Virus record (IMG/VR): IMGVR_UViG_3300042868_005134
Span: 1-64,000 of that record
Length of the DNA: 64,000 nt
Strand: one strand, 5' to 3'
Below are positions 5,802 through 61,314 of the stretch, piece by piece. The notes under the pieces were generated by a model. That model did not search any database and had not been told where the DNA came from. It saw only the letters and a program-made list of their open reading frames with translations. Within the stretch, counting starts at the first letter, position 1; every line of letters starts with the position of its first letter. The translations under genes and the position numbers were made by a program.

Positions 5802-6482
5802 TTAGCGAATTTCAGGGAACAAGCAGTCCTGAATGAACACTTTTACATCTTCTTCGTTTAGCCCTAGACTAGCCATAACTTTAGGAGTATGCGGATTCTG
5901 CTTTTGATTCTGTGCGTAGAAGTTCTGTGCGTCTTTAGTGCTTTCCACAGTATTATTAGTTTCTGACACAGTGGCAAGGTAATGATTTAAATTCTTACGT
6001 GCCATGGCAAGAATCTGAGTTAGCTCTTCGCCTTCGCTTACATTGCCTGCTGCCACCATGTGTTTGGTAAAAATACGTTGTGCCCAATCGGGTAATGGGC
6101 GTGGCTTGTTCCATTCTAGCTTGCTAGATTCATGTTCGAACCAGTCAATCATAGGATGGGCTGGATCTCCGGCGGGACTGAAATCATGAAAACAACCGGT
6201 AATTTTATTCTTACCTGCTACTACATCAAAGCCAAATATTGGTGCTGGATTGTGTAAGTGCGGAAACACACAGCAATGCATCATCCAAAGACCCCGAGTG
6301 TCTCTAGCATCTACTATGTCAATGTGCGCTCTACGGTAACTGTCGCTTTCCCACACCAAGTTAACCCACCCTGGTTTGTTAAAACGATCCATATTTTTTT
6401 CATGTAATAACCAGCCGCTGTTGTGAAAGGCTATTTCGAAATATTCTTGTACATCTACAAGTGTGTTCCAAACTTGACTCAT
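5802..6482 (-). CDS. pcyX: Ferredoxin-dependent bilin reductase, PcyA/PcyX type
   Basis: RRAHIDIVD, WMMHCCVFP, PIFGFDVVAG, RPLPDWA, QKQNPHT. Asp at the PcyA Glu76 position suggests PcyX. Start revised to 6482 (ATGA overlap with heme oxygenase stop). Confidence 0.8.
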   Translation of the reverse strand: MSQVWNTLVDVQEYFEIAFHNSGWLLHEKNMDRFNKPGWVNLVWESDSYRRAHIDIVDARDTRGLWMMHCCVFPHLHNPAPIFGFDVVAGKNKITGCFHDFSPAGDPAHPMIDWFEHESSKLEWNKPRPLPDWAQRIFTKHMVAAGNVSEGEELTQILAMARKNLNHYLATVSETNNTVESTKDAQNFYAQNQKQNPHTPKVMASLGLNEEDVKVFIQDCLFPEIR

Positions 6483-7018
6483 AATTCTGTGTTCAACGCT
6501 TTCATCAGTTTGATAGCCCACTCGAAAGCCACTCGAGCTTCATCGCCCAGGTCATCTGTGAGTTCTGCTCTAATTGCTGCCTTAAGAGCTTCTGAATCTT
6601 TAAACTGATAAAATCTGCCTTGTCCTGGAACTTTTTTAGCAATTATTTGTCCGCCAAACAAATCGCCCATGTGTCTACAGTACAGGTGAGCCTTGACTAG
6701 ATGTTTACGATCACTGTAGTTGAGTGCTAGTAAATATTGATAGTAATCAATAGTTGCGGGCAACCATTTAAGTTGATGGTTGGGTCCGACTAGTTCAATA
6801 CAATCTTGATAAATTTTATGTGCTCGTTCAATGTCGGGTAAGTTTTTTAACATACCCTGGCTATTTGCAGCTACCTCAATGCCGTTATAAACAAGTGTCA
6901 TTTGCCAAAGATAATTGGCGTATTCTTCTGTTGAAATACTGCCTGTAACTAATTTTTTGGCAAACAGCGTTCGTTCTGCGTCCGTGTGTAAATCTTTTGT
7001 TATGTCTCGTAAGCTCAT
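6479..7018 (-). CDS. hemO: Heme oxygenase
   Basis: LRDITKDLHTDAE (proximal His) and AHLYCRHMGDLFGGQII signature. Confidence 0.9.
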   Translation of the reverse strand: MSLRDITKDLHTDAERTLFAKKLVTGSISTEEYANYLWQMTLVYNGIEVAANSQGMLKNLPDIERAHKIYQDCIELVGPNHQLKWLPATIDYYQYLLALNYSDRKHLVKAHLYCRHMGDLFGGQIIAKKVPGQGRFYQFKDSEALKAAIRAELTDDLGDEARVAFEWAIKLMKALNTEL

Positions 7019-7317
7019 TCTTCCTCCATCTTTATTTGAAGCGGAAAACCGTTGCTTCTTGCGAGTTGTGTTGACTCTACTGCTTTTGCTTCAGCAATTT
7101 CAAAACTGTACACACCAGCAACGCCGCTGCCTGTATTATGTACCTCTATTGTGATTCCTTTAGCAGTTTCCTGAGTGTGCTTGAAGATATCTGTAAGTAT
7201 ACCCACAACAAAATCCATGGGTGTTGTTTCGTCATTTAGTAGTAATACTTTCCAACGTTTAGGTTCATGAATTTTCTGTTTGATTTTTTCATCAATTTGA
7301 ATTTCGGTAGTTGACAT
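7015..7317 (-). CDS. clpS: ATP-dependent Clp protease adaptor ClpS
   Basis: WKVLLLNDETTPMDFVV, EVHNTGSGVAGVYSFEIAEAK, GFPLQ; start revised to MSTTE after GGAG. Confidence 0.92.
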   Translation of the reverse strand: MSTTEIQIDEKIKQKIHEPKRWKVLLLNDETTPMDFVVGILTDIFKHTQETAKGITIEVHNTGSGVAGVYSFEIAEAKAVESTQLARSNGFPLQIKMEEE

Positions 7318-7362
7318 AATATTCTCCAAAAGTGGGAGAGAACAACTCCCCCGGTTTTATAT

Positions 7363-7788
7363 TTACTTGATTTCGATTCTACGAGGCTTAAGAGCTTCTG
7401 GTACAAGACGGTGTATGTCAATTTGTAACATACCGTGTTCTACTTTGGCGCCGCGAACTTCCATATACTCAGCAAGAGTAAATGTCTGTTCAAAGTCACG
7501 AGCTGCCAATCCACGATGTAAGTACTCAACTCCAGCATCTGCGTTGGGTCGATTTTTAATACCACGAATTGTTAATTGGTCCTGATCCACTTCTACAGTA
7601 ACTTCTTCTTTATTGAAGCCTGCCACTGCAACTTCAATAGCATACGTATCGTCGCTATATTTTACAATATTGTGCGGAGGATAGTTACCATTTTGGTGAT
7701 GTGTCGCACTGAAGTAGCGATCAAATCCTACTAGTGCTCTACTTAGTTGGGCAAGGTCTGCCGCGTTGATAGTTCTTAGCTGTGTCAT
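7363..7788 (-). CDS. Small heat-shock protein (Hsp20/IbpA family)
   Basis: NYPPHNIVK, IEVAVAGF, EYLHRGLAARDF, GMLQIDI, KPRRIEIK. Confidence 0.93.
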   Translation of the reverse strand: MTQLRTINAADLAQLSRALVGFDRYFSATHHQNGNYPPHNIVKYSDDTYAIEVAVAGFNKEEVTVEVDQDQLTIRGIKNRPNADAGVEYLHRGLAARDFEQTFTLAEYMEVRGAKVEHGMLQIDIHRLVPEALKPRRIEIK

Positions 7789-7843
7789 AATAATCTCCTT
7801 TGATAAGCAAGAATGAATGAGGGCCTTGTTATAAGCGCCCTCG
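7789..7843 (-). promoter_or_regulatory. ROSE-like RNA thermometer in hsp20 5' UTR
   Basis: 5' hairpin GAGGGC...GCCCUC, then UCUUGCUU-AUCA-AAGGAGA hairpin occluding the SD with a bulged G. Confidence 0.75.
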
Positions 7844-7854
7844 TTTGGTTTTAA

Positions 7855-9750
7855 TTAAGCCTTGTCTTTGACTTCGGTAAACTCTGCGTCTACAATGTTG
7901 TCATCGTTGGGCTTGGGTTGGCTGTCAGCTTGTTCAGCTTTGGCCTTGGCTTCCATTACTGGCATGCCCGCAGTGAATAAATCGCTTGTGGCCTTTTGAA
8001 TGGCTTCAGCGTCATCACCTTGTTTAGCATCCTCTACAGCTTTAATAGCATCTTCGATAGCAGTCTTCTGCTCGTTGGTCAACGAGCTTTCAACTTCTTT
8101 CATATCAGTGCGTAGGCTGTGTACAGATGCTTCCGCTTGGTTACGTGCCTCAATGAGTCCACGTTGTTTCTTGTCAGCTTCAGCGTTAACTTCTGCTTCC
8201 TGAACCATGCGTTCGATTTCTTCCTTGGTAAGTCCACTATCACTCTTGATAGTGATTTTGTTTTCCTTGCCTGTGTTCTTGTCCTTGGCGCTGACATGCA
8301 TGATACCGTTGGCGTCGATGTCGATAGTGACTTCAATTTGCGGTTGTCCTCTACGGCTAGGAGCGATGCCTTCTAGGTTGAACTCACCTAACATTTTATT
8401 GTATTGGAACAGTTCACGTTCACCCTGTGCTACCTTGATAGTAACAGCTGGTTGATTGTCTTCTGCTGTACTGAATGTTTGACTAGCTTTGGTTGGAATA
8501 GTTGTGTTCTTGTTAATCAACTTGGTAAACACGCCACCCATTGTTTCAATACCCAAGCTCAATGGCGTAACGTCTAACAATAACACGTCAGTGCGGTCGC
8601 CTGCTAGTACACTGCCTTGAATGGCTGCGCCTGCGGCAACTGCTTCGTCTGGGTTAACATCACGACGTGGTGCTTTGCCAAACAGTTTCTCAACTGTTTC
8701 TTGTACCTTAGGCATACGTGTCATACCACCAACAAGAATAACTTCATCAATGTCAGAGGCTGTGACGCCTGCGTCACTCATAGCTATCTTACATGGCTTA
8801 ACACTACGCTCGATGAGTTCTTCAACTAGACTTTCTAGTTTAGCACGATTGATCATGATGTTCATGTGCATCGGGCCGCCGGCATTGGCAGTAATGTATG
8901 GAAGATTAACAGCCGTTTGTTGTGTGCTAGACAATTCAATCTTGGCTTTTTCAGCTGACTCTTTCAAACGCTGTAATGCCAACACATCAGTCTTAAGATC
9001 CACACCTGTATCTTTCTTGAACTCGTCAACAAGGAAGTCCATGATACGTTGGTCGAAGTCTTCACCGCCTAGGAATGTATCGCCGTTAGTGCTTAATACT
9101 TCGATCTGTTTGTCGCCATCTACTTCCGCAATCTCAATGATTGATACATCGAATGTACCGCCACCAAGGTCGTAAACAGCAATTTTCCTATCTTTTTTAT
9201 CAGACTTATCAACACCATAACTAAGAGCTGCCGCAGTAGGCTCGTTGATAATACGCAGTACTTCCAAGCCTGCGATTCGGCCAGCATCTTTAGTTGCCTG
9301 ACGTTGACTGTCGTTAAAGTACGCAGGAACTGTGATAACGGCTTGAGTAACTTCATGTCCTAAATAGTCCTCGGCTGTCTTCTTCATCTTGCGAAGAACT
9401 TCAGCACTAATTTGTGGAGGTGCAAGTTGCTCTCCATTTGCTTCGACCCAAGCATCGCCATTGGCTGCTTCTGTAATCTTATAAGGCATAAGCCCTATGT
9501 CTTTTTGTACTGCTTCTTCTTTGAACTTTCGTCCAATGAGACGCTTGGCAGCATAAATTGTGTTTTTGGGGTTTGTAACTGCTTGACGCTTTGCGCTTGC
9601 GCCTACTAGAATTTCATTGTTAGCATAAGCAACAATACTTGGTGTAGTACGTGCGCCTTCGCTATTTTCAATTACTTTTGTAACACCGTTTTCAATAACG
9701 GCTACGCATGAATTTGTGGTACCTAAATCGATACCGATGACTTTGCTCAT
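7855..9750 (-). CDS. dnaK: Chaperone DnaK (Hsp70)
   Basis: [39 protein letters not shown]-terminal DAEFTEVKD. Confidence 0.98.
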
Positions 9751-9806
9751 AATTTTCTCCTTATATTAAGCAAGAATTTGTAGACCCTCGCGGCGTTCTA
9801 CAAATT
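9751..9806 (-). promoter_or_regulatory. ROSE-like RNA thermometer in dnaK 5' UTR
   Basis: AAUUUGUAGA...UCUACAAAUU hairpin, then UUCUUGCUUA-AUA-UAAGGAGAA SD-occluding hairpin; TAAATA at 9807-9812 just upstream. Confidence 0.7.
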
Positions 9807-9814
9807 TATTTATC

Positions 9815-37490: not shown

Positions 37491-38198
37491 TTAGATTTTT
37501 GTAGAATCTTTGCCTTTATACACTGTCCAGTTCAAACTTTCCACAGGAATACTAAGCCCTGGCTTATTAGCTACACCGGTAGCTGATCCAAGTCTACTCA
37601 CAAACTTAGTCTTGTCGATATATGGTACCATCTCAGGCCAGTGTTTATCAAACCAGTCGGCATCAAAGCCTGAGAGTACTTTTAACTTATGCTTTCTTAC
37701 AAAGTTTTGCATCATCTTGTGCTCGATATGCATTTGTCTCCATAGCCGATGATCTTCACCATACCATTTATAACTAGGGTATTCAATATCAAATCCTCCC
37801 GAGTCATGCCACATGTTAAAACTCATTTCAACATTACGTAGGGACATGATGACGTCAACTTCTGGTAAGTTTTCAGCAATCCAATCTAGTTGATAAGAAA
37901 ACCAGTGGCACTGTACAAATCTAATCTGATGTTGATCGTTGGTGTCGTAGGCTCTATCAATTTCTCCAAAGATTGCTTCTTTGTTAGGATACGTACTAAG
38001 TGCATCAAACTGTTCACCAATTTCATTATACGGGCCAGCAAACACTAGTCCTGTATGATGAGCTAGACTTCCTTTTGCGTTATTAACACGCCAAGGCTTT
38101 GCTCCTGACGGGTCAACGAGATTAGTAGCTGCAGACAAGTAGTATGCGGGCCACCCCCAACAGCTACCTGCAACTCCTGATATAAAAACATATTTCAT
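37491..38198 (-). CDS. Hypothetical protein, P-loop/sulfotransferase-like fold possible
   Basis: N-terminal VFISGVAGSCW loop; WHDSGGFDIEYPSYKWY. Confidence 0.5.
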   Translation of the reverse strand: MKYVFISGVAGSCWGWPAYYLSAATNLVDPSGAKPWRVNNAKGSLAHHTGLVFAGPYNEIGEQFDALSTYPNKEAIFGEIDRAYDTNDQHQIRFVQCHWFSYQLDWIAENLPEVDVIMSLRNVEMSFNMWHDSGGFDIEYPSYKWYGEDHRLWRQMHIEHKMMQNFVRKHKLKVLSGFDADWFDKHWPEMVPYIDKTKFVSRLGSATGVANKPGLSIPVESLNWTVYKGKDSTKI

Positions 38199-39157
38199 TT
38201 GGCAATAGTATCAATCAACGGTTTCCAGTCCTGTGTTTGCTTCTTCATATAAGCGCCGATTACAGCAGGAGTGTTCAAGTTAGAGTTAATTTCAAATTGT
38301 TGTTTTTTAAACAATTCTTTCAGTGCTGGGTTAGCATATGCTTTAGTGAATTCTATATGATACCATTGTAACACATCAGGACTTACATCCTTTTGTAATG
38401 CCAGGGCCCATTCTGAATTAATATCAAATCCGGGTAACACTGAATTCAGTGTGTTAATTTCTGGAAATGCTACAGATTTTTTCTTGCCGGCAATGGCAAT
38501 AATTTTAAGTTTTTTGTCCTTGTATAATTCTGAGACTATACTGATAGGAACAACAGCAAATCGTATATGCCCACCAATTACATCTGTTATTGCGAGAGTA
38601 GGGCCTCTATGATCTATACGTTGTACACCATCGACACCTTGTTTAAATTTAATTCGATTGGCTAACTCTTCATAGATTAGTCTTGCTCCGCCACTGGCAG
38701 CAAACGAAATTTTTTCATTTTTCAACACTTCCACTAATTGTGGCGGTGTTGATACAGGATCAGTTGGTAAGGTTACCACTGCAAATGCCGACTCCGCAAG
38801 ATGTATTGGATATACAAAACTTTCTGTCTTGTATGTTCTGTTTTGTTCTGATGGCACAGCAACACGGTCCATTGCGACGATTCCGTTTATGCTGGCTGCT
38901 AATACACTATGTCCATCAGCTGGTAGTTTGCTAAAATATTCGTTGCCAATGACACCACCAGCGCCTGGCTTATGTATAATATTGAATACCACTCCAGTAT
39001 TCTTGGTAACTTCTTCTGAAGTAATTCTAACCAATACTTCGTTGGCACTGCCCGGCGCAAACGGAACCACTACTTCAACTGGTTTGGTTGGTTGCCACGC
39101 AAAGGCTAAAGCTGGAACCATGACTAATACTACTAGCAATCTCTTAATTGAAACCAT
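38195..39157 (-). CDS. Bug/TctC tripartite tricarboxylate transporter substrate-binding protein
   Basis: WQPTKPVEVVVPFAPGS, HKPGAGGVIG, PADGH, DVIGGHI, KLKIIAI. Confidence 0.88.
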   Translation of the reverse strand: MVSIKRLLVVLVMVPALAFAWQPTKPVEVVVPFAPGSANEVLVRITSEEVTKNTGVVFNIIHKPGAGGVIGNEYFSKLPADGHSVLAASINGIVAMDRVAVPSEQNRTYKTESFVYPIHLAESAFAVVTLPTDPVSTPPQLVEVLKNEKISFAASGGARLIYEELANRIKFKQGVDGVQRIDHRGPTLAITDVIGGHIRFAVVPISIVSELYKDKKLKIIAIAGKKKSVAFPEINTLNSVLPGFDINSEWALALQKDVSPDVLQWYHIEFTKAYANPALKELFKKQQFEINSNLNTPAVIGAYMKKQTQDWKPLIDTIAK

Positions 39158-40866: not shown

Positions 40867-43800
40867 TTATCGTTTGACAAAGTGATAATCACCGTCAGGC
40901 CCGTTATTGCTAAACAAACCCTTACAATCAAATCCTATTGTGTCCATATAGGCTATAACAGTGTCTTTTAACGGAGCACCTTTGTTATATTCTACCGATT
41001 GTAGCTCTAGTATAACATGTTTTACAGTTTGCAACACTTGGCTTGCACCTTTTATTACATCCAACTCAGCACCTTGCACATCCATCTTGATTAACTCAGG
41101 CAAGGGAAACTGTTTTAATCTAACCACCGCATCCAGTGTTGCAGTTTTTAAAACTCGTTTGTGCTTTTCATTAAAGTACTGGGGTGCTTCTGGATTGACT
41201 TCGGCATTTTCTTTGTAATAGCTGTTGCCACCAGGATGCCAGTCATTTTGATAAAATTCAACTTCTTTGCCAGTAACATCGCTCAATGCTCCCATAAAGT
41301 ACTTTAAGCCCTGTTCCTTGTATAGGAATTCGCTAGAGTCCATAGCTTCAAACGCTACTGTTTCTGCATTGGGCCATATTCTTCGTGATTCATTAGTCCA
41401 ATGTAACACACATGCTCCTATGTCATAGATCACTCGAGGTTCAAATCCTTGTGCTTTTAATGCAGCCAAATAGTCAACGTGATCTTTTGGTATCAATCTT
41501 TGACTACCTAATTCCCTGAGTCTTGCTTTGATGTCCACTTGTTGGGACTCTGCTGGTGCCACGGCAGGGATGTTGTTGTCCACTGCAAAAGTAAAACTGC
41601 CAGTATGCTGACATTGTATAGTAGTGTCAGCATAAATTTTAAATCCTTTGCCCAGGGCTTTACGACAAAAATCTACATCTTCTGAAACAGTGTGATTGTG
41701 ATCCAATGCACTGTGATATTTAAACTGAGGATACCCAACATCCTTTAACACTTGACTCTTGACTAACACACAGCCAAACCCGCAGCTGGCAATTTCTATT
41801 AATCCATGTCCTTTTATTTTACCATAAGGAATATTGCTGACTCCACCGCGATCATTGTGTTCATACAGCTCTAGTATGTGTTGTCCAGGCTTACGTTGTA
41901 TATACAATCCTGACACCACAGGCTTGTCATGTGCCAATAACTTGACCAATGTGTCGGGAGCAAAGCTGATGTCGCTGTCCACACTGAACAAATAGTCATA
42001 ACCTTTTACTGTCCAGTCAGCGATCAAGTTTCTTACTTGATCAATGTTATAGCCGTAGAAGTATTGAAATGTGGTTTGGTAACCCTCGGGCACTATTAGG
42101 TCGTAGATGCTCTTGTATGTCTCGGGCTCTATGTTCTTGGCTGTGGGTATTGCTATCAATATTCTTTTTTTTTCGGTTGACATTTTTACTATTTCTCTTG
42201 CGTTTTTGTTTTGTTCTTGACCGTTGACTTTGTAGTCATTAAGTGGGTTGACGTCATTGTAGTTGTAAACCACGTCCTGCAGACATTTAACTTTGTCAGC
42301 ATCAGCTACTTCTATCAGTGAATAAAATACTGATCCGTCACCACCTGCTCGGTACCATTGTCCTGCGTCATCTTTAAATTGTATATCTTCGCAACTGTTC
42401 AATAGATGCTTTTTAAATGTTCTTAAATGCGTATACGGCAAGATCCAGTTGAAGTGATGTTGTCTGTATGTCTTGTTCTGTCGAACTGTTTGAGGATAAG
42501 GCTGACTGATCAAAGGAATACTGTCCGCCATACTCCAACAGCTTCCGTAGGTAAACTCTGTTGAGCCATCGTATATACTGTTGTAGTAACTGAACACAGT
42601 GTTGTCATTGACCAATGTGTCATCACCATCTAACAACATTACAATAGCATCGTCATCTAATGGTCTAATGTTTTCTATTTGATTACGAACAGCGCCGCGA
42701 TTTTCCTTGTTGTTTATTAATAAAAATTTGCCTTTAAGTTCTTGTGGCAAATTGCTTAATGCTGTTTTGACCACATCGGCAGAATCGTCAGTGCTGGCAT
42801 CGTTGATCAAATAATGCAGATAGTTGTCGTAATCTTGTGCAGCCACGCTGGCAATACATTTTTCAATATACTTGCTGCAATTATAAAACGGACTGATTAC
42901 TACAATCTGTTGTTCTCTGCCTGCTTTGTAGTTCTCCAACTCAACTGTGTTGTGAAACTTGCGATTGTATATCTTGTGTAGTCTATGATTGATTTTACTC
43001 ACAGCACGATAGTCTTGTTTGCTGAGATAGTGTTCTGACTTTTTATAGAAGTGCTGCTTCCATTGTAGTGCTACACTGTCCCATCCCGCAATATCTTTGA
43101 CAATGTTGCAGTAGTATTGTTTTTGTTGATGTAGGTATGGATTGCGATACGCTTCTATAGTGGTCTTGACAAACTGTTCAACTTGTTGCGGAACGTTTAT
43201 GTCAGGAAACAAACTATTGGGTTCTACAGCATAGTCAATTAGATAGCAGGCACCTGCTAGAGCAATTTCTTCCAGTGCTCCGAAGCGACAAGTTATGATA
43301 GGAGTGTTGTAGCATAGACTCTCCATTGAGGAGATGCCATATGTTTCAGGAAAGGCAGCTGGATACAACATGAAGTTAGCCTGTGCCAGTATATCAGCAA
43401 TTTCCCGTTGGCTAATAACGCCTGTAAACTCTATATCCAACTTGGCCAGTTCTGGATCAGCAGCCATCACTCGCCAATCTTTTTCCTGTTGATCAGGTTC
43501 TGCATTGGTACTGAATCTATAATAGCCGCCTATGACTTTTAATCGAGCTTCGGGTATGTGTCGCTTGACATGCGGCCATATCATCTTGACTAATGGTATC
43601 ATGCCTTTGGTAACACTTGCATTGTAGACAAACAAGTTTTTGTTTTTGGCTGCGATGTCAACTTCGTCGTGATACAGTCTAACACCGTTACGTGTTATAA
43701 ACAGCTTGTTCTTCAATACTTCAAAGTTTCGTCTACGCCCGTGATTGCAGTTGGCAATGTAAGTGGTGTGCCAGTCGCTCAGCGTAAAAATGTCTGTGAT

Positions 43801-44235
43801 GCGATTGTTCACAGTCAGGTCTTCAATCAAGTTGTCACCAAGACAAAATGTATCGTGCATCCAAAGTACTCGCATCTTGGCCTTGCTGAGAATCCTATCA
43901 TAAAGATTCATAGCGGCAAAACGATTGCTTCTATTGTCGTTTAGTTTAGCATAGTCTTTTGGATCAGTAAATGGGATCACAGTTCTTGAACTGATCACTA
44001 TGTCAAATTCATAGTCTTGTGCCAAGGCAGACAGTGGGCAGTAGGTCACTGTGTCGTAAATGCCTGGTTTAGCATGATCCATGTCACAGTTGTTAAAAAC
44101 TGTAACTTCGAATCCAATTTGTGATAGTTCTTTGGCCATCAGGGTGACAGCACTTTCGCTACCGCCTAGGCCTTGTTTGAATACTGTGGTACCATCGTAT
44201 GGGATACCTATAATGTCTATAATAGCAATCTTCAT
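40867..44235 (-). CDS. Multidomain glycosyltransferase (GT4 + GT2 + GT-A) fused to FkbM-type methyltransferase
   Basis: GLGGSE...FPETYGISSMES; SPFYN...INDASTD...LDGDD; FSVDSDI...SEDVDFC; IYDIGA...IKMDVQGAELDVIKGA. Confidence 0.88.
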   Translation of the reverse strand: MKIAIIDIIGIPYDGTTVFKQGLGGSESAVTLMAKELSQIGFEVTVFNNCDMDHAKPGIYDTVTYCPLSALAQDYEFDIVISSRTVIPFTDPKDYAKLNDNRSNRFAAMNLYDRILSKAKMRVLWMHDTFCLGDNLIEDLTVNNRITDIFTLSDWHTTYIANCNHGRRRNFEVLKNKLFITRNGVRLYHDEVDIAAKNKNLFVYNASVTKGMIPLVKMIWPHVKRHIPEARLKVIGGYYRFSTNAEPDQQEKDWRVMAADPELAKLDIEFTGVISQREIADILAQANFMLYPAAFPETYGISSMESLCYNTPIITCRFGALEEIALAGACYLIDYAVEPNSLFPDINVPQQVEQFVKTTIEAYRNPYLHQQKQYYCNIVKDIAGWDSVALQWKQHFYKKSEHYLSKQDYRAVSKINHRLHKIYNRKFHNTVELENYKAGREQQIVVISPFYNCSKYIEKCIASVAAQDYDNYLHYLINDASTDDSADVVKTALSNLPQELKGKFLLINNKENRGAVRNQIENIRPLDDDAIVMLLDGDDTLVNDNTVFSYYNSIYDGSTEFTYGSCWSMADSIPLISQPYPQTVRQNKTYRQHHFNWILPYTHLRTFKKHLLNSCEDIQFKDDAGQWYRAGGDGSVFYSLIEVADADKVKCLQDVVYNYNDVNPLNDYKVNGQEQNKNAREIVKMSTEKKRILIAIPTAKNIEPETYKSIYDLIVPEGYQTTFQYFYGYNIDQVRNLIADWTVKGYDYLFSVDSDISFAPDTLVKLLAHDKPVVSGLYIQRKPGQHILELYEHNDRGGVSNIPYGKIKGHGLIEIASCGFGCVLVKSQVLKDVGYPQFKYHSALDHNHTVSEDVDFCRKALGKGFKIYADTTIQCQHTGSFTFAVDNNIPAVAPAESQQVDIKARLRELGSQRLIPKDHVDYLAALKAQGFEPRVIYDIGACVLHWTNESRRIWPNAETVAFEAMDSSEFLYKEQGLKYFMGALSDVTGKEVEFYQNDWHPGGNSYYKENAEVNPEAPQYFNEKHKRVLKTATLDAVVRLKQFPLPELIKMDVQGAELDVIKGASQVLQTVKHVILELQSVEYNKGAPLKDTVIAYMDTIGFDCKGLFSNNGPDGDYHFVKR

Positions 44236-53625: not shown

Positions 53626-61314
<7,689 letters not shown>

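What the first reader, a model, noticed from the sequence alone, without database searches (positions are those of the whole stretch)
7789..9812. Twin ROSE-type RNA thermometers on phage dnaK and hsp20
Seen: both 5' UTRs have a stable upstream hairpin and then the same SD-sequestering hairpin: UCUUGCUU-AUCA-AAGGAGA (7812-7794) and UUCUUGCUUA-AUA-UAAGGAGAA (9776-9755), each with a bulged G opposite the SD. Known: U(U/C)GCU paired with the SD is the ROSE signature, described mainly for bacterial small heat-shock genes. Inference: the phage transcribes its chaperones from a late-type promoter (TAAATA 9807-9812) and gates their translation by temperature. That would be a virus-encoded thermosensing circuit, and a ROSE on dnaK is atypical.
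Basis: partly seen in the sequence, partly recalled or inferred. Interest (0 to 1): 0.78.

Follow-up and report, generated by a model that had tools for sequence, protein, structure and literature searches.

The report
ROSE-type leaders on phage chaperone genes
A giant lake-water phage puts the same short RNA leader, a close look-alike of the bacterial ROSE heat-sensing RNA switch, in front of its dnaK and hsp20 chaperone genes. The leader is shared by hundreds of aquatic phages, including cultured cyanophages, so phages may tune chaperone synthesis to temperature, though that is not yet shown.

Summary

A covariance model built only from relatives' hsp20 leaders finds the window's dnaK leader at 55.6 bits. 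In 678 kb of related phage DNA it hits only the starts of dnaK and hsp20, plus groES in one relative.

Hairpin I covaries strongly. The SD helix is 98% paired in 95 leaders, with only U or C opposite the G and only G or A at the bulge.

The leader is a sub-threshold relative of Rfam ROSE_3, the validated two-hairpin Pseudomonas ibpA thermometer. The best relatives score 33-34 bits against a gathering score of 43, and the recognition is reciprocal. It also precedes hsp20 in cultured cyanophages, pelagiphages and others.

A late-type ATAAATA promoter is well supported for dnaK but not for the window's hsp20.

Temperature gating is inferred, not shown. Nearest-neighbour folding gives weak hairpins and no extra occlusion of the ribosome-binding site compared with other phage genes. 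For dnaK it prefers a competing fold with codons 2-3.

Verdict: a new, virus-borne member of the ROSE-like class on unusual genes, and directly testable.

The parts
9807..9813 (-). ATAAATA, a T4-type late-promoter-like motif. It lies just after the stop codon of the mazG-like gene and 1 nt before dnaK hairpin I.
   Evidence: Sequence. The motif is conserved 40-95 nt upstream of the start in 89 of 94 dnaK relatives. In the window, 9 of 11 minus-strand ATAAATA sites lie 11-63 nt upstream of a gene start, although 96% of the window is coding.
9776..9805 (-). dnaK leader hairpin I: AUUUGUAGA-A-C-[G]-CC GCGA GG-G-UCUACAAAU. It is stable and has a bulged G in a YGCC/GGG top.
   Evidence: Fold at 37 C, centroid -10.1 kcal/mol. 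It aligns to helix 1 of model R1. All 9 pairs of the homologous helix show compensatory changes in 95 leaders.
9755..9776 (-). dnaK leader hairpin II. Anti-SD UUGCU is at 9773-9769 with the bulged G at 9771. The loop AUA is at 9766-9764. The SD AGGAG is at 9761-9757.
   Evidence: Sequence. The isolated hairpin is -3.1 kcal/mol at 37 C and -7.1 at 15 C. R1 scores it at 55.6 bits, E about 1e-11, with a model built from hsp20 leaders only.
9743..9753 (-). UUAU-G-AGCAA (last four leader nt, start codon and codons 2-3 of dnaK). This stretch is complementary to AUAA and UUGCUU of hairpin II and is a predicted competitor helix.
   Evidence: It forms part of the ViennaRNA minimum-energy fold at 5-45 C when coding sequence is included. 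The fold is predicted in 59% of dnaK relatives. Codon 2 is AGC in 81%. No equivalent is conserved in hsp20.
7855..9750 (-). dnaK (Hsp70), 631 aa
   Evidence: Pfam HSP70, 852.9 bits, full length.
7819..7842 (-). hsp20 leader hairpin I: GAGGGC-[G]-CUU AUAAC AAG-GCCCUC. It lies in the dnaK-hsp20 spacer.
   Evidence: Fold. Covariation in 90 hsp20 leaders: 7 of 9 pairs have compensatory changes, and 0 of 500 shuffles reach the observed score.
7794..7812 (-). hsp20 leader hairpin II. Anti-SD UUGCU is at 7810-7806 with the bulged G at 7808. The loop AUCA is at 7804-7801. The SD AGGAG is at 7799-7795.
   Evidence: Sequence. R1 scores 64.1 bits. Rfam ROSE_2 aligns to 7841-7787 at 16.7 bits. The isolated hairpin is -2.1 kcal/mol at 37 C and -5.2 at 15 C.
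7363..7788 (-). hsp20, an IbpA-type small heat-shock protein of 141 aa
   Evidence: Pfam HSP20. About 40% identity to enterobacterial IbpA/IbpB.
7015..7317 (-). clpS (Clp protease adaptor), the next gene in the conserved dnaK-hsp20-clpS block. It is not convincingly part of the element.
   Evidence: Pfam ClpS. Its leader gives only a weak R1 match of 14.6 bits, E 0.43.

Best explanation
The dnaK and hsp20 genes of this roughly 383-kb lake phage each carry a short two-hairpin leader of the ROSE-like RNA-thermometer class. It is closest to the Pseudomonas ibpA type (Rfam ROSE_3).

Shown:
- There is a GC-rich, covarying 5' hairpin I.
- It is followed by a weak AU-flanked hairpin II, in which CU(U/C)-[G/A bulge]-CU pairs with the strong SD AAGGAG through a U.G or C-G pair.
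- The element is specific to chaperone genes: dnaK, hsp20, and groES-groEL in relatives.
- It is conserved across several hundred aquatic phages, cultured T4-like cyanophages included.
- dnaK is preceded by a conserved ATAAATA late-type promoter motif.

Inferred:
- Transcription from ATAAATA starts a few nucleotides before hairpin I. This places a protective hairpin at the 5' end of the mRNA.
- hsp20 in this phage is probably read through from dnaK.
- At low temperature hairpin II hides the SD from the 30S subunit. As temperature rises it melts like a zipper and translation increases.
- By nearest-neighbour energies, the phage hairpins reach the stabilities that the validated P. aeruginosa hairpin has at 25 C (repressing) and 42 C (permissive) at about 17 and 31 C for dnaK, and about 7 and 23 C for hsp20. 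That would be a thermometer tuned to lake temperatures.
For: Motif and position:
- Searches show the motif at the stated coordinates, far above chance, and specific to these genes.

One RNA family, restricted to chaperone genes:
- Model R1, built from 90 hsp20 leaders, finds the window's dnaK leader at 55.6 bits and its hsp20 leader at 64.1 bits.
- All 129 hits in 678 kb of relatives lie at dnaK or hsp20 starts, apart from a third copy before groES-groEL in L049.
- A second phage groES also has the leader.

Structure:
- Hairpin I has compensatory changes in 9 of 9 pairs.
- The SD helix is 98% paired.
- The wobble position is U.G in 81 leaders and C-G in 12.
- The bulge is G in 146 and A in 33 of 179 leaders, never a pyrimidine that could pair.
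- The spacing between anti-SD and SD varies from 3 to 8 nt, with one case of 11. That fits an RNA hairpin rather than a fixed protein operator.

Link to validated thermometers:
- Rfam ROSE_3 aligns to relatives' leaders at 24.9-34.1 bits, with E as low as 5e-4 against all 4227 families, always at the right place.
- The P. aeruginosa ibpA leader scores 69.2 bits with ROSE_3 and 27.8 bits (E 3e-6) with the phage model.
- The phage model's 30 weak hits in 61 enterobacterial loci all lie directly upstream of ibpA or ibpB. Rfam confirms ROSE_2 at the ibpA sites.
- Krajewski et al. 2013 (PMC3669281) showed that two-hairpin ROSE-like leaders work. They found that hairpin II alone suffices and that deleting the bulged G locks the switch off.

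Tuning and promoter:
- Energy comparison.
- Promoter evidence.

Expression in nature:
- Lake metatranscriptome assemblies hold near-identical dnaK, hsp20 and clpS pieces. One of them crosses the dnaK-hsp20 junction.
Against: - No temperature experiment exists.
- No Rfam ROSE model reaches its gathering score. In the window the only hit is ROSE_2 at 16.7 bits against a gathering score of 65. The best relative scores 34.1 bits with ROSE_3 against 43.
- The SD helix cannot covary because the SD is fixed, so its support is conservation only. RNAalifold did not predict it.
- Nearest-neighbour models give weak hairpins of -3.1 and -2.1 kcal/mol at 37 C.
- SD opening energies are lower than in 11 confirmed enterobacterial ROSE_2 leaders.
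- Ribosome-binding-site opening energies are no higher than for 59 other phage genes. dnaK is equal and hsp20 is lower, p about 1e-10.
- With coding sequence included, the window's dnaK anti-SD is predicted to pair with codons 2-3. That leaves the SD in an 8-nt loop at every temperature.
- The G-C clamps flanking the ROSE motif in Pseudomonas are replaced here by A-U pairs.
- The metatranscriptome data are assembled contigs. They give no transcript 5' ends, and DNA carry-over cannot be excluded.
Confidence: 0.62

Rival explanations
1. The leader is a ROSE-derived relic or a temperature-independent element. Hairpin I protects the mRNA 5' end, and hairpin II merely damps translation from a very strong SD or sets mRNA stability. 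No physiologically relevant temperature switching takes place in the phage's habitat.
For: - Predicted SD and ribosome-binding-site occlusion is no greater than for other phage genes.
- Hairpin II is weak and lacks the G-C clamps that Krajewski et al. found important.
- The leader could have arrived with an ibpA-type gene captured from a bacterium (about 40% identity to IbpA).
Against: - A relic would not keep the anti-SD, the purine-only bulge and the U/C wobble in 179 of 180 leaders whose hairpin I sequences have turned over completely.
- A relic would not be copied onto dnaK and groES.
- Any marginally stable SD hairpin is temperature-sensitive in principle. The predicted energy changes by about 0.15-0.18 kcal/mol per degree.
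Confidence: 0.2
2. The conserved UUCUUGCUUAAU-AAGGAGA segment is an operator for a trans-acting factor that co-regulates the chaperone genes. The factor could be a phage or host RNA-binding protein or a small RNA. The hairpin would be secondary to that binding.
For: - The sequence is conserved beyond what pairing needs, for example the U-rich flanks and AU loops.
- It marks a regulon-like set of three chaperone operons.
- In the alternative dnaK fold, GGA sits in a small hairpin loop.
Against: - No candidate factor was identified.
- The same motif works without any factor in bacteria, both in E. coli reporters and in vitro (PMC3669281).
- The variable loop length of 3-8 nt is unlike a fixed binding site.
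- The variation seen is exactly what pairing with the SD allows.
Confidence: 0.08
3. For dnaK only, the working structure is a longer helix, not the ROSE hairpin. UUGCUU pairs with G of AUG plus codons 2-3 (GAGCAA), and AUAA pairs with UUAU. This occludes the start codon and leaves the SD in a loop. It could be a competitor in a three-way switch or a different kind of translational block.
For: - It is the ViennaRNA minimum-energy fold at 5-45 C, about -6.4 against -3.4 kcal/mol at 37 C.
- It is predicted in 59% of 90 dnaK relatives.
- Codon 2 is AGC in 81%, against 3-59% at other conserved Ser codons and 23% genome-wide.
- The CUUACU clade instead has UCU/UCA-AAG, which in 6 sequences restores an A-U pair in the same register.
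Against: - The association between codon and bulge rests on one or two clades.
- Four UCA sequences break the pair, and C at the wobble position weakens it.
- hsp20 and groES leaders share the anti-SD but have no such complement (1 of 90).
- MSK is simply the usual DnaK N-terminus.
Confidence: 0.1

Closest known systems
Short ROSE-like RNA thermometers of Pseudomonas ibpA (Rfam ROSE_3, RF02523; Krajewski et al. 2013, PMC3669281)
   Same: - A two-hairpin leader of about 60 nt.
- Hairpin I has the same GGAUGCC...GGGUCC core with a bulged G.
- Hairpin II has U(U/C)GCU opposite the SD with a bulged G and a U.G wobble.
- The AUG lies outside the hairpin.
- The downstream gene is an IbpA-type small heat-shock protein.
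- Model recognition is reciprocal.
   Different: - Phage leaders score 25-34 bits, below the gathering score of 43.
- The window's own leaders are not reported by ROSE_3 at all.
- The G-C clamps around the motif are replaced by A-U pairs, so hairpin II is predicted to be about 1.6-2.6 kcal/mol weaker at 25 C.
- The leader is driven by phage late-type or sigma-70-like promoters, not a sigma-32 promoter.
- It also sits on dnaK and groES.
- It is encoded by viruses.
Enterobacterial ibpA and ibpB ROSE-like thermometers (Rfam ROSE_2, RF01832)
   Same: - The core AUUCU(C/U)GCU...AGGAG...AUUAUG is nearly identical to the window's hsp20 leader (alignment).
- Two consecutive heat-shock genes each have their own thermometer, as with ibpA-ibpB. 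The phage model hits both spacers.
   Different: - The window scores 16.7 bits against a gathering score of 65.
- The enterobacterial ibpA leaders aligned here have additional 5' sequence before the stable hairpin and are longer overall.
- Their SD hairpin is more stable, at -4.7 against -3.0 kcal/mol at 37 C.
Classical rhizobial ROSE1 elements (Rfam ROSE, RF00435)
   Same: The same U(U/C)GCU and bulged-G principle of SD occlusion upstream of class A small heat-shock genes.
   Different: - They have three or four hairpins (PMC3669281) and are about 100 nt long (my own knowledge).
- From my own knowledge, the final hairpin also encloses the AUG.
- No Rfam hit was found here.
Known phage-borne RNA thermometers: lambda cIII (my own knowledge) and the fourU element of SPbeta blyA (PMC10586365, listed)
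   Same: Virus-encoded leaders proposed or shown to change translation with temperature.
   Different: - They belong to different structural classes: alternative folds in cIII, and four U's opposite the SD in blyA.
- They sit on lysis or lysogeny genes of temperate phages, not on chaperone genes.
- Neither is a widely conserved family.
CIRCE/HrcA operator of bacterial dnaK and groE operons
   Same: An inverted repeat between the promoter and the start of chaperone operons, shared by dnaK and groESL.
   Different: - CIRCE is a perfect 9-bp inverted repeat with a fixed 9-nt spacer, bound by a repressor (my own knowledge).
- Here one arm is the SD itself, the repeat is imperfect with a bulge, and the spacing varies from 3 to 8 nt.

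Membership tests
ROSE-like RNA thermometers (as defined in PMC3669281 and PMC12857270) | A U(U/C)GCU motif imperfectly paired with the SD in the 3'-proximal hairpin | tested here: met
   UUGCU is at 9773-9769 and 7810-7806, opposite AGGAG. CU(U/C)(G/A)CU is present in 179 of 180 unique dnaK and hsp20 leaders. The helix is 98% paired in 95 leaders.
ROSE-like RNA thermometers | A bulged G opposite the SD plus a U.G wobble that destabilise the helix | tested here: met
   G9771 and G7808 are bulged in the folds. Across relatives the bulge is G in 146 leaders and A in 33, never C or U. The wobble position is U.G in 81 and C-G in 12.
ROSE-like RNA thermometers | One or more stable 5' hairpins preceding the thermosensing hairpin | tested here: met
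   Hairpin I is about -10 kcal/mol. It has compensatory changes in 7 of 9 pairs and in 9 of 9. Many dnaK relatives have a second GGGC...GCCC hairpin.
ROSE-like RNA thermometers | Location in the 5' UTR of a heat-shock gene, classically a small heat-shock protein gene | tested here: met
   hsp20 is IbpA-type. dnaK and groES are new gene associations. No paper linking ROSE-like elements to dnaK was found.
ROSE-like RNA thermometers | Temperature-dependent melting of the SD hairpin and heat-induced translation | not testable with these tools
   Only nearest-neighbour predictions were possible. They are equivocal.
Rfam ROSE_3 (RF02523) | Covariance-model score at or above the gathering score of 43 bits | tested here: not met
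   The window gave no ROSE_3 hit at E up to 10. The best relatives score 34.1 (Melnitz) and 32.9 (L116) bits. None reached the gathering score in 16 loci. The positive control, P. aeruginosa ibpA, scores 69.2 bits.
Rfam ROSE_2 (RF01832) | Covariance-model score at or above the gathering score of 65 bits | tested here: not met
   The hsp20 leader scores 16.7 bits, E 5.3 over all families, and the dnaK leader is not reported. Positive controls score 67.8-91.9 bits in 11 enterobacterial loci.
T4-type late promoter | A TATAAATA-like element a few nucleotides upstream of the transcript start, recurring before late genes | tested here: inconclusive
   ATAAATA is at 9813-9807 and is conserved in 89 of 94 dnaK relatives. 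It is positionally enriched before gene starts in the window. TATAAATA or TAAATA precedes hsp20 in S-SKS1, HTVC008M and Syn9. No transcript 5' ends were available and no gp55-like factor was looked for. The window's hsp20 has no such motif.
CIRCE/HrcA-type DNA operator | A perfect inverted repeat with fixed spacing | tested here: not met
   The repeat is imperfect with a bulge, and the spacing varies from 3 to 8 nt, with one case of 11.

The most novel reading that the evidence does not exclude
Aquatic phages carry their own heat-shock regulon.
- One ROSE-type thermometer leader has been spread onto dnaK, groES-groEL and hsp20 in jumbo lake phages.
- The same leader sits on hsp20, a core gene of marine T4-like cyanophages, and on hsp20 of pelagiphages and other aquatic phages.
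- It is tuned some 10-20 C colder than its bacterial counterparts.

If so, the virus rather than the host senses water temperature and sets chaperone supply late in infection. dnaK may add a second layer through a competitor helix with its own codons 2-3.
Probability: 0.45. Interest if true: 0.78.

Novelty: new member of a known kind. Interest (0 to 1): 0.66.

Why it matters
ROSE-like thermometers are described for bacterial small heat-shock genes and, recently, for ABC transporter genes (PMC11342760, PMC12857270). Eight full-text searches found no report of one in a virus or on dnaK or groES. A 2024 review still treats temperature-responsive phage RNA structures as speculation (PMC10884466).

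If the leaders work as thermometers, several things follow:
- A core gene of marine cyanophages and the chaperone genes of large lake phages would be under virus-encoded temperature control.
- That bears on how infection outcome responds to seasonal and long-term warming.
- It would give a natural series of low-temperature-tuned minimal thermometers for RNA biophysics and synthetic biology.
- It would offer a clue to why phages carry hsp20 at all.

The idea can be tested at once with reporter fusions, and in cultured systems such as Syn9, S-SM2, P-SSM7, HTVC008M and Melnitz.

Tried and rejected
1. Hairpin I as an intrinsic terminator with UUCUUGCUU as its U-tract. The terminator scan did not call it. 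In relatives a sigma-70-like or ATAAATA promoter lies between the upstream stop codon and hairpin I.

2. A sigma-32-type promoter reading of CTTG. Rejected by inspection: a promoter there would give a transcript without the conserved SD.

3. A general feature of strong-SD genes. Rejected: R1 and the regex hit only chaperone genes.

4. Thermodynamic proof of SD occlusion. I tried SD opening energy, whole-RBS opening energy, register-specific pair probabilities and open-chain melting temperatures. None separates the chaperone leaders from other genes. The open-chain melting temperature of 64-79 C is not informative. An indexing slip made 'AUG' there mean the three bases before the AUG. It does not affect the conclusions.

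5. A conserved anti-SD:coding helix in hsp20. Not conserved, 1 of 90.

6. The first protein alignment (A1) was too diverse for the genome-contig scan. The narrower A2 found only Enterobacteriaceae, because of the exact peptide patterns used. These loci serve as ROSE_2 controls, not as evidence of the gene's origin or the phage's host.

7. Near relatives among deposited phage genomes. There are none at the DNA level. The host remains unknown.

8. Metatranscriptome contigs gave presence but no transcript ends.

9. The clpS leader as a third copy. The match is only 14.6 bits, E 0.43, so it is not counted.
Full report
**Setting**

All genes around the finding lie on the minus strand. In order they are:
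- a MazG-like gene (10099-9815)
- dnaK (9750-7855)
- an IbpA-type hsp20 (7788-7363)
- clpS (7317-7015)
- a heme oxygenase (7018-6479)
- a ferredoxin-dependent bilin reductase (6521-5802)

The window is the first 64 kb of a 383-kb IMG/VR contig (L002/L082). It also carries ribonucleotide reductase, tail-fibre genes and a 2562-aa collagen/Ig-repeat protein. It is therefore a jumbo tailed phage, and sequencing runs place it in lake water. No close relative exists among deposited phage genomes.

**The observation**

- dnaK: UUCUUGCUUA (9776-9767), AUA, UAAGGAGAA (9763-9755), AUG at 9750.
- hsp20: UCUUGCUU (7812-7805), AUCA, AAGGAGA (7800-7794), AUG at 7788.

In both, CU-U pairs with G-A-G of the SD side through a U.G wobble. 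A G is left bulged (9771 and 7808), and CU(U) pairs with (A)AG. Each of these hairpins is preceded by a stable hairpin, at 9805-9776 and 7842-7819, worth about -10 kcal/mol.

The pattern TTGCTT-N2-8-AAGGAG occurs only at these two places in 64 kb. The expectation is 0.09, and none of 100 shuffles reached two.

**Relatives**

IMG/VR holds more than 590 DnaK relatives and 93 Hsp20 relatives of this phage. Most have the same dnaK-hsp20-clpS order. I extracted every upstream region.

Of 180 unique dnaK and hsp20 leaders defined only by an AGGAG, an ATG and the tblastn gene position, 179 have CU(U/C)(G/A)CU lying 3-8 nt upstream of AGGAG (one case of 11 nt). Conversely, 168 of 189 unique matches to that motif in about 1.2 Mb lie at these two genes. 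Most of the rest are the same genes with mis-extrapolated starts.

**Structure**

In 90 unique hsp20 leaders (alignment A3), hairpin I shows compensatory changes in 7 of 9 pairs. No shuffle out of 500 and no slid register comes near the observed score. Hairpin I has a conserved top, 5'-GG(Y)[G]CC ... GG(G)CC-3', with its own bulged G.

The SD helix cannot covary, because one strand is the SD. What it shows is:
- near-invariant pairing
- U (most) or C (few) opposite the first SD G
- only G or A at the bulge

A pyrimidine at the bulge could pair and lock the helix, and none is seen. RNAalifold did not predict this weak helix.

In a structure-aware alignment of 95 leaders of dnaK, hsp20 and groES, from metagenomes and cultured phages, the SD helix is 98% paired. 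All nine hairpin I pairs covary.

**One family, restricted to chaperone genes**

I built covariance model R1 from hsp20 leaders only.
- It finds the window's hsp20 leader at 64.1 bits and the independent dnaK leader at 55.6 bits, E about 1e-11. Nothing else in the window is convincing, and clpS scores 14.6 bits with E 0.43.
- In 678 kb from 70 related loci, all 129 hits lie at dnaK or hsp20 starts, with one exception. L049 has a third copy in front of groES-groEL, confirmed by Pfam.
- A second phage groES also has the leader.
About four more are truncated copies. Most of the others lie inside coding sequence.

**Relation to known thermometers**

In the window, Rfam reports only a weak ROSE_2 alignment on the hsp20 leader, at 16.7 bits against a gathering score of 65. 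The architecture and the core AUUCU(C/U)GCU...AGGAG...AUUAUG line up.

Relatives whose hairpin I reads GGAUGCC...GGGUCC align to ROSE_3. Melnitz scores 34.1 bits (E 5e-4 against all 4227 families). S-SKS1 scores 27.9, C48C1 26.8, S-SM2 24.9 and L116 32.9. All are below the gathering score of 43.

Positive controls behave as expected:
- Eleven enterobacterial ibpA leaders pass ROSE_2.
- The P. aeruginosa ibpA leader passes ROSE_3 at 69.2 bits.

The recognition is reciprocal:
- R1 scores the P. aeruginosa leader at 27.8 bits, E 3e-6.
- Its 30 weak hits in 61 enterobacterial loci all lie directly upstream of ibpA or ibpB.

Krajewski et al. 2013 (PMC3669281) describe this architecture in Pseudomonas. 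It has two hairpins, U(U/C)GCU opposite the SD and the AUG unpaired. Hairpin II alone suffices, deleting the bulged G represses, and hairpin I is stable and conserved.

The phage leaders therefore meet every sequence and structure criterion of the ROSE-like class. They fail Rfam's curated thresholds. I file them as a divergent, virus-borne branch next to ROSE_3.

**Cultured phages**

The same leader precedes hsp20 in all nine cultured phages I tested:

| Phage | R1 score (bits) |
|---|---|
| Methylophilales phage Melnitz | 49.8 |
| Sinorhizobium jumbo phage Phosso | 37.2 |
| S-SM2 | 36.7 |
| C48C1 | 33.9 |
| Syn9 | 31.9 |
| P-SSM7 | 30.5 |
| S-SKS1 | 30.3 |
| HTVC008M | 17.9 |
| HTVC115P | 17.5 |

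A blastn search with the S-SKS1 leader finds 313 cultured cyanophage records. hsp20 is one of the 25 cyanophage core genes (PMC3037559).

**Promoters**

ATAAATA (9813-9807) lies between the MazG stop codon and dnaK hairpin I.
- It is kept in 89 of 94 dnaK relatives.
- In the window, 9 of 11 minus-strand ATAAATA sites lie 11-63 nt upstream of a gene start, although 96% of the window is coding.
- The T4 late promoter is TATAAAT(A) (PMC3037559). S-SKS1, HTVC008M and Syn9 have it before hsp20.

The late-type promoter is thus well supported for dnaK. For hsp20, relatives often have TTGAC-N17-19-TAnnnT (45 of 96), but the window has neither motif. In this phage hsp20 is probably read through from dnaK. 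A metatranscriptome contig spans 7642-7969, which is consistent with that, but it is not proof.

**Does it sense temperature?**

This step is inferred. The thermodynamic results are mixed.

*Isolated hairpins.* They are weak. The dnaK hairpin is -3.1 kcal/mol at 37 C and -7.1 at 15 C. The hsp20 hairpin is -2.1 and -5.2. Family medians are -3.0 at 37 C and -6.0 at 15 C. Enterobacterial ROSE_2 hairpins are -4.7 and -7.9.

*Comparison with the validated hairpin.* The P. aeruginosa hairpin II has an ensemble energy of -7.0 at 25 C, where it represses, and -4.7 at 42 C, where it permits translation. The window's dnaK hairpin reaches those values at about 17 and 31 C. The hsp20 hairpin reaches them at about 7 and 23 C. 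That would suit a lake.

*Results that do not help the thermometer reading.*
- In the full context, SD opening energies are lower than in confirmed ROSE_2 leaders.
- SD and whole-RBS opening energies are not higher than in 59 other SD-bearing genes of the same phages. dnaK is equal and hsp20 is lower, p about 1e-10.
- For dnaK, once 12-18 nt of coding sequence are included, the model prefers UUGCUU:GAGCAA plus AUAA:UUAU. This leaves the SD in an 8-nt loop and pairs the AUG.

*The competing dnaK fold.* It has some support. Codon 2 is AGC in 81% of relatives, and the CUUACU clade has UCU/UCA-AAG. That support is phylogenetically confounded, and the fold is absent from hsp20.

ROSE hairpins are known to rely on non-canonical pairs (PMC3669281, PMC12857270), which nearest-neighbour models do not capture. 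I therefore treat these results as no support rather than as refutation.

**Expression in nature**

Several lake metatranscriptome assemblies contain pieces of dnaK, hsp20 and clpS with 0-3 mismatches. These are assembled contigs without direction or 5' ends, and DNA carry-over cannot be excluded.

**Alternatives considered**

I weighed a terminator, a sigma-32 promoter, a CIRCE-like DNA operator and a general property of strong-SD genes. All were rejected, for the reasons given under Tried and rejected. Three rivals remain:
- a temperature-insensitive attenuator or stabiliser
- an operator for a trans-acting factor
- a dnaK-specific alternative helix

**Literature**

Eight full-text searches found ROSE-like elements only in bacteria, on small heat-shock genes and ABC transporter genes, plus the related ROSE-G. 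None was in a phage or on dnaK or groES. A 2024 review lists temperature-responsive phage RNA structure as speculation. The library is incomplete, so prior description elsewhere cannot be excluded.

**Verdict**

The leaders are ROSE-type by anatomy and by reciprocal model recognition, though below Rfam's thresholds. They define a chaperone-specific cis element that is widespread in aquatic phages. Temperature gating is the most likely function, with confidence of about 0.6, and it remains to be shown.

Noticed in passing
L350:251-319 (Syn9); L341-L348 (P-SSM7, S-SM2, HTVC008M, Melnitz, Phosso, C48C1, S-SKS1, HTVC115P): The same ROSE-type leader sits directly upstream of hsp20 in every cultured phage tested. 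In several of them a TATAAATA-like motif lies just upstream of it. A blastn search with the S-SKS1 leader finds 313 cultured cyanophage records. hsp20 is a cyanophage core gene, so this may be a general feature of the Kyanoviridae.
   Followed up: partly
L049:5888-5955 (before groES 5950-6237 and groEL 6248-7873); L289:10716-10782: In some relatives a third copy of the leader precedes a phage groES-groEL operon inserted between dnaK and hsp20. One cis element therefore marks three chaperone operons.
   Followed up: yes
window 9743-9753 with 9763-9773: The dnaK anti-SD is also complementary to the G of AUG plus codons 2-3 (GAGCAA). ViennaRNA prefers this fold. Codon 2 is AGC in 81% of relatives.
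   Followed up: partly
window 5802-7317 (-): clpS, a heme oxygenase and a ferredoxin-dependent bilin reductase follow the chaperone genes. The last two overlap by 43 nt. This is a pigment-pathway gene pair of the kind known from cyanophages. clpS and heme oxygenase also follow hsp20 in relative L049.
   Followed up: no
window 7318-7363 (-): In the clpS leader, UUCUCUCC can pair either with GGGGGAG upstream or with the SD GGAGAA. The phage model matches it only weakly (14.6 bits, E 0.43).
   Followed up: partly
window minus strand: 63493, 53626, 40870, 28309, 18892, 16811, 13425, 3961: ATAAATA lies 11-35 nt upstream of eight further gene starts. These are a likely set of T4-type late promoters with short leaders. 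Only the dnaK leader is long and structured.
   Followed up: partly
L001-L159, upstream of hsp20: In 45 of 96 relatives hsp20 has a near-consensus TTGAC-N17-19-TAnnnT promoter overlapping the end of dnaK. Eleven have ATAAATA, and 43 (including the window) have neither. Promoter type has therefore changed while the leader stayed.
   Followed up: partly
L269:4207-4401: A 65-aa ORF of unknown function (MQANYINGLV...) carries the complete set of ATAAATA, hairpin I and SD hairpin. It may be a further member of the regulon.
   Followed up: no
window 53626-61314 (-); 40867-44235 (-); 38195-39157 (-): Three further genes stood out. One is a 2562-aa protein with collagen repeats and 11 He_PIG Ig domains, in a region of strong negative GC skew. 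One is a 1122-aa fusion of glycosyltransferase and methyltransferase domains. One is a TctC-like solute-binding protein.
   Followed up: no
L349 (OQ572409.1, 'UNVERIFIED: Pseudomonas phage Y7'): This deposited 'phage' record holds an ibpA gene with a full-scoring ROSE_3 leader (69.2 bits). It looks like P. aeruginosa chromosomal DNA and was used here only as a positive control.
   Followed up: no
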